Assembly (NCBI RefSeq): GCF_011386835.1
Contig: NC_088792.1
Location: 66,216,001 to 66,280,000 of the forward strand
DNA length: 64,000 nt
Source of the DNA: Chrysemys picta bellii
Taxonomy: Eukaryota
Reading direction: 5' to 3'
Below, piece by piece: positions 36,241 through 39,676 of this stretch (the stretch's first letter is position 1; every line of letters begins with the position of its first letter). The translations under genes were made by a program, and so were the position numbers. The notes beneath the pieces were generated by a model. The model worked only from the letters and a program-made list of their open reading frames with translations, searched no databases and was not told where the DNA came from.

Positions 36241-36357
36241 CTTACAATAGAAAGTTTATTTATTTATTTTTGTCTGTTTGTTTCCAGTCAGTTTTTTTTT
36301 TAAAAAACAAATACAAAAAAAAAAAAAGCTGATCACAGTTTGCTCAAACAGCCAGAC
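36241..36357 (-). other. HOXA5: Terminal segment of the HOXA5 3'UTR with poly(A) signal (rest of gene not in the sequence)
   Basis: Minus strand GTCTGGCTGTTTGAGCAAACTGTGATCAGC-T(n)-GTATTTG...ACTGACTGGAAAC...AATAAACTTTCTATTGTAAG closely matches the mammalian HOXA5 mRNA 3' end as I recall it. AATAAA at 36255-36260; about 11 kb 5' of HOXA4, the expected place. Confidence 0.8.
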
Positions 36358-36858
36358 NNNNNNNNNNNNNNNNNNNNNNNNNNNNNNNNNNNNNNNNNNN
36401 NNNNNNNNNNNNNNNNNNNNNNNNNNNNNNNNNNNNNNNNNNNNNNNNNNNNNNNNNNNNNNNNNNNNNNNNNNNNNNNNNNNNNNNNNNNNNNNNNNNN
36501 NNNNNNNNNNNNNNNNNNNNNNNNNNNNNNNNNNNNNNNNNNNNNNNNNNNNNNNNNNNNNNNNNNNNNNNNNNNNNNNNNNNNNNNNNNNNNNNNNNNN
36601 NNNNNNNNNNNNNNNNNNNNNNNNNNNNNNNNNNNNNNNNNNNNNNNNNNNNNNNNNNNNNNNNNNNNNNNNNNNNNNNNNNNNNNNNNNNNNNNNNNNN
36701 NNNNNNNNNNNNNNNNNNNNNNNNNNNNNNNNNNNNNNNNNNNNNNNNNNNNNNNNNNNNNNNNNNNNNNNNNNNNNNNNNNNNNNNNNNNNNNNNNNNN
36801 NNNNNNNNNNNNNNNNNNNNNNNNNNNNNNNNNNNNNNNNNNNNNNNNNNNNNNNNNA
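36358..36858. other. Assembly gap (501 N) where HOXA5-HOXA9 should lie
   Basis: N run of near-round length between the HOXA5 3'UTR tail and sequence contiguous with miR-196. Confidence 1.
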
Positions 36859-37273
36859 AACTAATGGCTGAAACATTTGAAAGTATGACAATTGATTTAA
36901 TTATCTTCTTCTGTTTATGTGTGTGCTGCTTATTTCCTGTTGTTGCAAGGAAAAAGAGACCAATGGGAGGGGGAAAACATCTCTGTCAACTGCATTTGAA
37001 AAATATTATTCAGCATAGAGACCAGGAAACGGCAGAGCAACTGCGTAATAATTAAATTCATGTGTGAATATTCTGCATGCAAAAATATGTTTCTCATTAG
37101 TTTTACATCACTATTTGGTCTCTCGCGCGCGCTCTGTTTTTGTTTCTTTTCAACTTTTCCCAACAACTACACCAGAAAGCTTACAGAGATGTAATTTTTA
37201 ACAACAGTTTCTATCCTGATTTGAAATCACAAAAGCTACATGAAACTATTATTTAATACATTAGTCAGAAAAC

Positions 37274-37307
<34 letters not shown>

Positions 37308-39591
37308 AGAGATTGCCCAAGCGAATGGCAATCCGTTCTTTTACAACATTTTTAATGCAAATAAAGTTCTATGTACTCATTATAGCTTTTTTTTTCATGC
37401 GTGTACTGACATACCGCAATAGAAAAACAAGTCTATGTCTATTACTGAAAGACGGAACTCCACGTCATTTGTATTTATTATTGAATCAACTGGGGTGAAA
37501 TGTGATTGCAGAACTTCCTTTTTCCAGTAAGAAAAATAATCTTAACTCCAGGAGTCCTGGATGTTTGTGTTAGAATTTGGGTACTGAAGCTGCAGCGTGT
37601 TTCATTTTTGATTGCTCACACTTATATACATAGACAGAATGTAATATAATACGGCAGATTCTTAAACACCCTATGTATTCCGAAAATTGCTTGCTGCAGG
37701 ATTAAAGGAGTATTAGGAGACTGAAAGACACCTAGAGTTAAAATAATAATACATAATAAATAACGTTATTTTCAGGCAGGTTTCTGACTAACACACTCAA
37801 TATGTTCTCCTTTCTTTTTTCCCCTTTTATGGCGAGTTTATTTTAAATTCTGATAATCAGGGTATTGAAATTATTAATTTGATATAGTTTGCATCACAAA
37901 TAATTTTAAACTATAAGAAACATAATCACGTAGACAGTTAGATAGTCACCACCAGGAAAAAATAATATAAAATTGGTCCGTCTATATGGTATCTCGGGGT
38001 ATTTAGAAGAGAAACAGTTCATCTGTAGTAATTTTAAAAAAGGTTCTGTCCTCCATACCTGTATAATCAGAACTCTAAAGCTGCAATTTAGATACGATTT
38101 TTAAACCTAATGTAACAGAAAGGATATTGCTATTTTTAACTGAAGGGAAATAGTAAATGCAATTTATCCATTAATGCACTATAGAGCTTCCATATAGGCT
38201 TTGGCATTTGGATAAATAGTCTGTAGGAATGTTCAGTCTTGATTGAATGGGAATTGCTGGATCGCCTCTTAAAGAACTTATTTCCATTGAAAACTAACCA
38301 GTTCCAGAAATTTTAAAATGGAAATTTGTATAGAACTTGAGATAAGTGCTCATGAAATTAGAATTATACACTGAAAATTTTAAATAAAGCAGAGGCAAGC
38401 CTATGTACACACGCTATAACTTAGATAGATAGATATACACACACAAACACATAAGTATACATCGTTATACATACAGTGTGTATACAGACATATACACTCA
38501 GAGTCATATGTCTGCAATTGAAAGGTTTGACTCTTTCTTTGTAAATGCATCCCTTCCTATGAGAATTTAATTATAACACATCTACATAATCCGTGAAAAT
38601 CCCGTTTCCAAACTATTTTTATTCACTGTAGCCTATATGAGTCCTGAAAAGTTTAAAAACGAAAGATCAAAAATGATATTCAATTTTAAAATACTTCCCA
38701 AGTCCTTGCAGCCAGAAGAAATCTTGATCATGTACGTTAAGGATAAATGTTGTGCCTGTGATCTAAACAAGGGCTGCAGCTCCTATTTCTGTTTGGTCTA
38801 TGTACACAATAGCCGGCAGCCCTAGATCCCCTGCACAAGGCCCAGTGAGGTCGCTGTTGCTCATTCAGCCTCAATGGAATGTCGGCGCCTGGACACACTG
38901 TAATAATGATCGTAACCGAGGCCTTGTGAGCTATAGGGAAATGGGTTTTGGCCGATTTTAAATCACTTCTGGTTACCCCTTCACCTCCGGTAAAGTCCTT
39001 TTGTGTAATATATGATTAATCCCTGGACATATGTAGAAGCAGACTTAGATTTTAGGTACACTCAAGGCTGAGATGAACACGAAATAACATAACAGTGTGC
39101 AGGCAAAAAAAAGGTGACACAATGACATAAAATATCTTAACAAAAAAATGAGATTCCGTCTCTGGTCTGGTTGCAGTCGCTACCTTTGCTTACTTACATT
39201 GACGCTACATTGCAAGGACTCAGGATGACAGAGTGTATGAATATTGGCACGCAATTGAATAGTAACGCATTTAAAAAATCCAGCAAAAACAACAACAACA
39301 ACAACAAAAACAGAACAATTGCTGAGCAGAATGTAAAGCGCACCTGACCTTGAATGGAGACGACAAGATATATTTAAAAATTCCATAAGCAAGCAGGCTT
39401 ACTCAAGAACTAGCTAACCTTGAAGAGTTCCCCAAGATTTCCCCCTTGGCTGCAACGTTTATTGGGAAGTGAATGAACCTTCGTTGCTGATAGGAAACAA
39501 TGGCATTGGGACTTGACGCCTACAGATAGCTTCAGCTGTAAGATTTCTTCGGTAGTAAACCAACTCGCACTATCATACCTGGTGATGATTT

Positions 39592-39676
39592 CAACTGAAG
39601 TAATTAAGGCAGTTTCGTGCTGCAGAGAGAAAGGTGGAGCCCCAACAACATGAAACTACCTAAACTACAGAACAGT
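39592..39676 (-). ncRNA. MIR196B: miR-196 precursor of the HoxA cluster (miR-196b orthologue); mature 5p at 39641-39662
   Basis: Minus strand TAGGTAGTTTCATGTTGTTGGG followed by the loop GCTCCACCTTTCTCT and 3p arm CAGCACGAAACTGCCTTA. Located 3' of HOXA10. Confidence 0.96.

What the first reader, a model, noticed from the sequence alone, without database searches (positions are those of the whole stretch)
36241..39676. HOXA5, HOXA6, HOXA7 and HOXA9 coding sequences are missing; the cluster collapses across a 501-N gap
Seen: no homeobox occurs between HOXA4 (ATG 25116) and HOXA10 exon 2 (41795). The HOXA5 3'UTR tail stops exactly at the gap edge (36357), and unbroken sequence from 36859 reaches miR-196 in 2.8 kb. 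Knowledge: amniote HoxA carries A5, A6, A7 and A9 here, with roughly 25-30 kb between the HOXA5 3' end and miR-196b in human (from memory); only 3.4 kb is present. The A3-A4 and A10-A11 spacings look normal. Inference: the ~500-N run is a fixed-size scaffolding placeholder hiding about 20-25 kb, so annotation would falsely report loss of four Hox genes. A real deletion would be extraordinary, but it is unlikely because the break coincides with a gap.
Basis: partly seen in the sequence, partly recalled or inferred. Interest (0 to 1): 0.75.

Follow-up and report, generated by a model that had tools for sequence, protein, structure and literature searches.

The report
Scaffold gap hides four HoxA genes
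The turtle HoxA cluster in this window seems to lack HOXA5, A6, A7 and A9 only because a fixed 500-N scaffolding gap stands in for about 25 kb of DNA; this is an assembly artefact, not a gene loss.

Summary
Observation confirmed. The window holds homeoboxes only for HOXA3, A4, A10 and A11, all on the minus strand. mir-196 lies at 39597-39671. One run of exactly 500 N (36358-36857; the finding's title says 501) lies between A4 and mir-196.

The two flanks are not neighbours in any relative I could fetch. The first base after the gap (36858) pairs with a base 1,677-1,691 bp upstream of the HOXA9 start codon in six other turtles. The left flank pairs with the HOXA5 3'UTR of a bird, about 0.78 kb past the stop codon.

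In the pond turtle Emys, 22.2 kb beyond the right anchor carries A9, A7 and A6 and has no counterpart in the window. Extrapolating to the HOXA5 3'UTR gives about 25-26 kb hidden.

The other N runs match the real lengths in relatives (164 vs 162; 284 vs 284). Only the 500-N run does not.

Ten other turtle species have a protein named Hox-A9. So does Chrysemys picta bellii, probably this species, on a contig listed as 25,000 bases.

Interest is low.

The parts
23802..25116 (-). HOXA4: homeobox exon about 23802-24146, first exon up to the ATG at 25116
   Evidence: collinear with flycatcher HOXA4
25117..35384 (-). HOXA4-HOXA5 intergenic region, collinear with the flycatcher
   Evidence: window 26479-35384 pairs with L007 29629-18234 in order
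35385..35668 (.). Two short N runs (132 and 140) around a 12-base island. The total of 284 equals the 284 bases of the flycatcher, so these runs are true to length
   Evidence: coordinates only; letters not looked up
35669..36357 (-). Left flank: the last ~115 nt of the HOXA5 3'UTR (about 36243-36357), then sequence 3' of the poly(A) site.
   Evidence: 35669-36312 pairs with L007 17949-17232, 783 nt past the flycatcher HOXA5 stop, E 3e-100
36255..36268 (-). Three overlapping AATAAA poly(A) signals of the presumed HOXA5 mRNA
   Evidence: read directly from the sequence
36358..36857 (.). Run of exactly 500 N: a fixed-size scaffold join standing in for about 25 kb (the rest of HOXA5, then HOXA6, HOXA7, HOXA9 and 1.68 kb of HOXA9 upstream sequence)
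36858..39596 (-). Right flank: intergenic DNA between mir-196 and HOXA9. Its end pairs with a base 1,677-1,691 bp upstream of the HOXA9 ATG in six turtles
39597..39671 (-). mir-196 precursor (mir-196b by position)
   Evidence: RF00256, 79.4 bits, E 4e-17
41795..44040 (-). HOXA10: exon 2 with the homeobox, stop ending at 41795; exon 1 at 43222-44040

Best explanation
The four genes are missing from this scaffold, not from the animal. Two stretches of assembled sequence were joined by a scaffolder that writes a fixed 500 N whatever the true distance. One stretch ends inside the HOXA5 3'UTR. The other ends 1.68 kb upstream of HOXA9. About 25 kb belongs between them: the rest of HOXA5, then HOXA6, HOXA7, HOXA9 and the HOXA9 promoter region.

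Shown: the flanks are non-adjacent points of a conserved cluster, and at least 22.2 kb of orthologous DNA has no counterpart in the window.

Inferred (about 50%): the missing piece survives as a separate unplaced scaffold of 25,000 bases, cut out of a long-read contig as 'debris' by the editing step of the Hi-C scaffolder 3D-DNA. The two remaining fragments were then re-joined with that program's default 500-N gap. The alternative is an ordinary contig break with the small piece left unplaced or unassembled.
For: (1): the run is exactly 500 N. The other N runs are 132-164 N and match real lengths in relatives (164 vs 162 in Caretta; 284 vs 284 in flycatcher).
(2): the alignment to six other turtles (77.8-98.9% identity) starts at window base 36858, the first base after the gap. 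That base pairs with a point 1,677-1,691 bp upstream of their HOXA9 ATG.
(3): window 36-36312 is collinear with the flycatcher from HOXA3 to the HOXA5 3'UTR, and the alignment stops at my mask 45 bases before the gap.
(4): 22,197 bp of Emys beyond the right anchor, carrying A9, A7 and A6, has no orthologous match in the window.
(5): edge to A6 stop is 20,756 bp in Emys and 20,720 bp in Carettochelys. A6 stop to the left anchor is about 5.1 kb in the flycatcher. The sum is about 25-26 kb.
(6): proteins named Hox-A9 exist in ten other turtle species and in Chrysemys picta bellii (XP_005297044.2), the latter on one contig listed as 25,000 bases.
(7) (PMC3038165): a PCR survey found that a turtle has the same 39 Hox genes as birds and mammals.
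(8) (PMC13077969): the current painted-turtle reference was scaffolded with 3D-DNA into 25 pseudochromosomes and has 9,850 unplaced scaffolds. (PMC7368989): 3D-DNA's editing step removes parts of contigs as 'debris' and leaves gaps.
(9): the best holders of this stretch are runs of 2020-2023 from one sample, which fits that project.
Against: The species and assembly of the window are inferred, not shown. The grounds are an earlier unchecked note calling it painted turtle, the identity ranking among emydids and the run dates.

The left anchor rests on a bird only, at 69% identity, because no turtle HOXA5 locus could be reached.

The 25-26 kb estimate is slightly above 25,000 and is too coarse to test an exact 25,000-base excision.

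That 500 N is the 3D-DNA default is from my memory, not from a tool. I did not open the 25,000-base contig, so I have not shown that it carries A5, A6 and A7.
Confidence: 0.93

Rival explanations
1. A real deletion of about 25 kb removed HOXA5, A6, A7 and A9 in this species or individual, and an assembly gap happens to sit on the junction.
For: No homeobox or other A5-A9 coding remnant lies between A4 and A10. No reads could be laid to exclude it.
Against: The break coincides with a round 500-N run. Homology to relatives runs to the gap edge on the right and to within 45 bases of it on the left, instead of meeting at a junction. The flanks share no repeat that could have mediated a deletion. 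Four emydids 97.0-98.9% identical to the window keep A9 and A7, and Emys keeps A6 as well. Hox-A9 is on record for Chrysemys picta bellii. From general knowledge, mouse Hoxa5 null mutants mostly die around birth, so a homozygous four-gene loss in a healthy turtle is implausible.
Confidence: 0.03
2. The 500 N are an exact-length mask of 500 real letters, like the short N runs, so the two flanks really lie 500 bp apart.
For: The short N runs of this window are true to length. Earlier notes report N runs of exact gene or exon length in this genome.
Against: The length is exactly 500, the round figure of a scaffolder, while the true-to-length runs are 132-164 N. This reading would require the real 25-kb deletion argued against above. 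The scan's program labels this run an assembly gap.
Confidence: 0.01
3. The artefact is real but the cause differs. The long-read assembler broke the contig twice here, for example from low coverage over GC-rich Hox CpG islands. The small middle contig was too short for Hi-C placement, or was never assembled. No 'debris' excision took place.
For: Small contigs are commonly left out of 3D-DNA scaffolds (PMC10659057). HiFi coverage was only about 20x. My length estimate of 25-26 kb does not demand exactly 25,000.
Against: The contig length on record is exactly 25,000. That looks like a cut at a fixed bin size rather than a natural contig end. The flanks at the break are AT-rich (32-35% GC), not the GC-rich sequence that usually breaks assemblies.
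Confidence: 0.4

Closest known systems
Fixed-size Hi-C scaffolding gaps, with 'debris' excised by the 3D-DNA editing step
   Same: A round 500-N run joins two sequences that are not adjacent. The missing piece is apparently a small unplaced contig. The same behaviour was documented for the stickleback Y centromere, where 3D-DNA removed 57.7 kb and 29.3 kb from contigs beside a gap.
   Different: Here the lost piece is unique, gene-dense and highly conserved DNA, not repeats. The cause of the cut was not observed.
Amniote HoxA cluster (A1-A7, A9-A11, A13, with mir-196b between A9 and A10)
   Same: The order, strand and spacing of A3, A4, mir-196, A10, A11 and HOXA11-AS are as in other sauropsids.
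   Different: A5, A6, A7 and A9 are absent from the scaffold, but only across the N run.
Genuine lineage-specific Hox gene losses (for example HoxC3 in turtles and archosaurs, HoxD12 in snakes; PMC3038165)
   Same: An annotation pipeline would report missing Hox genes.
   Different: Real losses are single genes shared by whole clades and seen in uninterrupted sequence. This case is four adjacent genes, is not shared by sister genera, and lies across a gap.

Membership tests
Unsized scaffold join (placeholder gap) | N run of a fixed round length, unlike the sized runs nearby | tested here: met
   500 N against 132, 140, 145 and 164 N. The 164-N run and the 284-base block (132 N, 12 letters, 140 N) match real lengths in relatives.
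Unsized scaffold join (placeholder gap) | The flanking sequences are non-adjacent in orthologous loci, and homology runs up to the N run | tested here: met
   The right edge is 1,677-1,691 bp upstream of the HOXA9 ATG in six turtles, with the alignment starting at the first base after the gap. The left edge lies in the HOXA5 3'UTR, with the alignment ending at my mask 45 bases before the gap. At least 22.2 kb lies between them in Emys.
Unsized scaffold join (placeholder gap) | This individual's reads run off both edges into other sequence and do not bridge them | not testable with these tools
3D-DNA 'debris' excision | The assembly was scaffolded with 3D-DNA | tested here: inconclusive
   PMC13077969 says so for painted-turtle SLU_Cpb5.0. 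That the window comes from that assembly is inferred.
3D-DNA 'debris' excision | The missing piece exists as a separate unplaced scaffold whose ends abut the two gap edges | not tested
Only metadata were seen: Hox-A9 [Chrysemys picta bellii] on a contig listed as 25,000 bases.
Genuine Hox gene loss | Uninterrupted sequence across the former position of the gene | tested here: not met
   The position is occupied by 500 N.
Genuine Hox gene loss | The gene is absent from close relatives or from the species' other records | tested here: not met
   A9 and A7 are present in four emydids, and A6 in Emys. Hox-A9 is named for Chrysemys picta bellii.
HoxA cluster | A-type paralogues in colinear order, with mir-196 3' of A10 and HOXA11-AS antisense to A11 | tested here: met
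   (best hits are named Hox-A10).

The most novel reading that the evidence does not exclude
The 500 N conceal little or nothing, and this turtle, or one of its haplotypes, really lacks HOXA5, HOXA6, HOXA7 and HOXA9 through a clean 25-kb deletion running from the HOXA5 3'UTR to 1.7 kb upstream of HOXA9.
Probability: 0.02. Interest if true: 0.9.

Novelty: not a real feature. Interest (0 to 1): 0.1.

Why it matters
The value is practical. On this chromosome-scale scaffold an annotation or synteny pipeline would report that a turtle lost four central Hox genes, or would place them on an unplaced scaffold outside their cluster. Studies of Hox cluster size, conserved non-coding elements or colinearity that use this assembly would be wrong for HoxA.

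If the piece was cut out by the Hi-C scaffolder's editing step, the case also warns that unique, gene-dense DNA, and not only repeats, can be excised and orphaned. Round 500-N joins inside conserved gene clusters would then deserve a check.

Tried and rejected
(1) Reads across the junction. The first read-laying run failed on a 12-base island between N runs.

(2) Earlier findings of this scan gave nothing near this place and nothing under HOXA5, A6, A7, A9 or HoxA.

(3) Emydura HOXA10 isoform X2 (P0104) is not on record.

(4) Reaching a turtle HOXA5 locus by walking A10 to A9 to A7 to A6. This got as far as the end of A6 in Emys and Carettochelys. The representative search with Emys HOXA6 exon 1 returned only bird, lizard and mammal isoforms.

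(5) A repeat shared by the two flanks that could have mediated a deletion: none found.

(6) Papers naming painted-turtle HOXA5-A9, or noting a HoxA gap: none found. The original 3D-DNA paper is not held.

(7) Rejected: that the cluster is HoxD or HoxB. The C-termini of the group-10 and group-11 proteins, the named best hits, mir-196 and HOXA11-AS all say HoxA.

Full report
WHAT IS IN THE WINDOW

The window is a HoxA cluster read from its 3' side, with all genes on the minus strand. A six-frame scan for the homeodomain helix-3 motif finds four homeoboxes:
- about 4.2k, group 3
- about 23.95k, group 4
- about 41.87k, group 10, ending ...ELTANFNFS
- about 53.37k, group 11, ending ...YYSANPLL

The first exon of the group-10 gene finds proteins that their sources name Hox-A10. 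Rfam places mir-196 at 39597-39671 on the minus strand, and HOXA11-AS1 conserved regions at 56.2-58.2k on the plus strand.

There are five N runs: 145, 132, 140, 500 and 164 letters. The one in question is 36358-36857, exactly 500 N, not 501.

A tblastx of the gene spans of Emys HOXA9, A7 and A6 and of flycatcher HOXA5 hits the window only at the four known genes. Nothing hits between 25.2k and 41.7k.

ARE THE TWO SIDES CONTINUOUS?

I tried the direct test first. Twenty public runs from 13 studies hold this stretch. The first read-laying run failed on a 12-base island between N runs.

I tested continuity by comparison with other species instead, reading coordinates only.

RIGHT EDGE

I fetched HoxA loci of other turtles through their HOXA10, HOXA9 and HOXA7 proteins:
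- Caretta caretta (L001)
- four emydid assemblies (L002-L005); one search names Trachemys, Terrapene and Emys among the carriers of that protein
- Emys again (L006)
- Carettochelys (L008)

The window aligns to these from its very first base after the gap:
- 36858-50278 to L002 at 98.7% identity
- 36858-45161 to L003 at 98.9%
- to L004 at 97.5% and to L005 at 97.0%
- to Caretta at 92.9% (that alignment starts at 36859)
- to Carettochelys at 77.8%

In all six, that base pairs with a point 1,677-1,691 bp upstream of the HOXA9 start codon. The relatives continue from there into HOXA9. The window continues into N.

LEFT EDGE

No turtle HOXA5 locus could be reached. A flycatcher HOXA6 gene model has a very long range, and its locus covers HOXA7 to HOXA3 (L007). 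Window 36-36312 is collinear with L007 57933 down to 17232. The last block, 35669-36312, pairs with 17949-17232 (69% identity, E 3e-100), ending 783 nt past the flycatcher HOXA5 stop codon at 16449.

Three AATAAA signals lie on the minus strand at 36255-36268.

HOW MUCH IS HIDDEN

In Emys the right anchor is at record position 232,878,248 and L006 ends at 232,900,445. Those 22,197 bp carry HOXA9, A7 and A6. They have no orthologous match in the window, only paralogous homeoboxes and simple repeats.

From the right anchor to the HOXA6 stop is 20,756 bp in Emys and 20,720 bp in Carettochelys. From the HOXA6 stop to the left anchor is about 5.1 kb in the flycatcher. The sum is about 25-26 kb. The first figure is a measured lower bound. 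The last part is an extrapolation from a bird.

THE OTHER N RUNS

The other N runs behave differently. The 164-N run equals 162 bases in Caretta. The block 35385-35668 (132 N, 12 letters, 140 N) equals exactly 284 bases in the flycatcher. These runs are true to length. The 500-N run is not.

DOES THE ANIMAL HAVE THE GENES?

A PCR survey found the same 39 Hox genes in a turtle as in birds and mammals (PMC3038165). The cluster of HOXA9 proteins lists members named Hox-A9 for these species:
- Caretta caretta
- Lepidochelys kempii
- Lepidochelys olivacea (this member carries no Hox-A9 name in its source)
- Chelonia mydas
- Trachemys scripta elegans
- Terrapene carolina triunguis
- Gopherus flavomarginatus
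- Gopherus evgoodei
- Chelydra serpentina
- Pangshura tecta
- Emydura macquarii
- Carettochelys insculpta
- Chrysemys picta bellii (XP_005297044.2), seen on one contig listed as 25,000 bases

An earlier, unchecked note of this scan calls this genome the painted turtle. The identity ranking fits a deirochelyine emydid that is neither of the two closest assemblies: 98.9% and 98.7% to two emydid assemblies, 97.5% and 97.0% to the other two, and 92.9% to Caretta.

LIKELY CAUSE

The current painted-turtle reference (SLU_Cpb5.0) was built from HiFi contigs, 10x links and 3D-DNA Hi-C scaffolding. It has 25 pseudochromosomes and 9,850 unplaced scaffolds (PMC13077969). The best holders of this stretch are runs of 2020-2023 from one sample, which fits that project.

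From my own knowledge, 3D-DNA writes 500 N at every join, and its misjoin editor works on 25-kb bins. A published case shows that this editor removes parts of contigs as 'debris' and leaves a gap (PMC7368989).

A contig of exactly 25,000 bases carrying the species' Hox-A9, a hidden stretch of about 25 kb and a 500-N join together suggest one sequence of events. The piece was cut out of a continuous contig and orphaned, and the two remaining fragments were re-joined. I give this sub-claim about 50%. The alternative is an ordinary double contig break with a small unplaced or unassembled contig.

RIVALS

A real deletion would need a junction that happens to coincide with a round N run. It would also need homology that runs to both edges, no mediating repeat, loss in one genus only, and viability without four central Hox genes. 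I give it about 3%.

An exact 500-letter mask would need the same deletion. I give it about 1%.

LIMITS

- No read-level evidence.
- Species and assembly are inferred.
- The left anchor comes from a bird only.
- The 25,000-base contig was not opened.
- Spliced protein models were never joined. Exons were searched by reference.
- I did not fetch Logan contigs of unknown origin that might be this species (P0121, P0122).
- Human entries in hit lists were not used.

VERDICT

The apparent loss of HOXA5, A6, A7 and A9 is not a biological feature. Interest is low. It is worth flagging only to users and curators of this assembly.

Noticed in passing
window 35385-35668: 132 N, 12 letters, then 140 N make 284 places, exactly the 284 bases of the flycatcher between the flanking alignments. 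This is an indel-free and probably ultraconserved block just 3' of HOXA5. Together with earlier notes of N runs of exact gene or exon length in this genome, the short N runs look like exact-length masks rather than gaps.
   Followed up: partly
window 54793-54956: A 164-N run in the HOXA11 region corresponds to 162 bases in Caretta, so it is also true to length.
   Followed up: partly
L007 10001-48665 (Ficedula albicollis): The annotated HOXA6 gene (isoform X1, 241 aa) spans 38.7 kb and runs over HOXA5 and HOXA4. These are read-through isoforms that splice the HOXA6 first exon to far downstream exons.
   Followed up: no
L001 10001-30190 (Caretta caretta, GCA_965140235.1): A 311-aa 'unnamed protein product' spans 20 kb. 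It matches 48% of the HOXA10 first-exon query at 97% identity and carries only Pfam DUF3528. It is probably a fused HOXA11/HOXA10 gene model.
   Followed up: no
L002 10001-16709 (emydid assembly GCA_013100865.1): The HOXA9 gene range starts 5.1 kb upstream of the ATG used in the other emydids. This implies an annotated isoform with an upstream coding exon in the mir-196 / HOXA10 3' region.
   Followed up: no
window 56230-58213 (+): Three Rfam HOXA11-AS1 conserved regions (2, 4 and 5) score well above threshold in this turtle. The antisense lncRNA blocks are conserved outside mammals.
   Followed up: no
window 43198-44040 (-) and 24487-25116 (-): HOXA10 exon 1 carries a run of 13 glycines, and HOXA4 exon 1 carries proline runs of 11 and 8. 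These are ordinary homopolymer tracts of Hox proteins.
   Followed up: no
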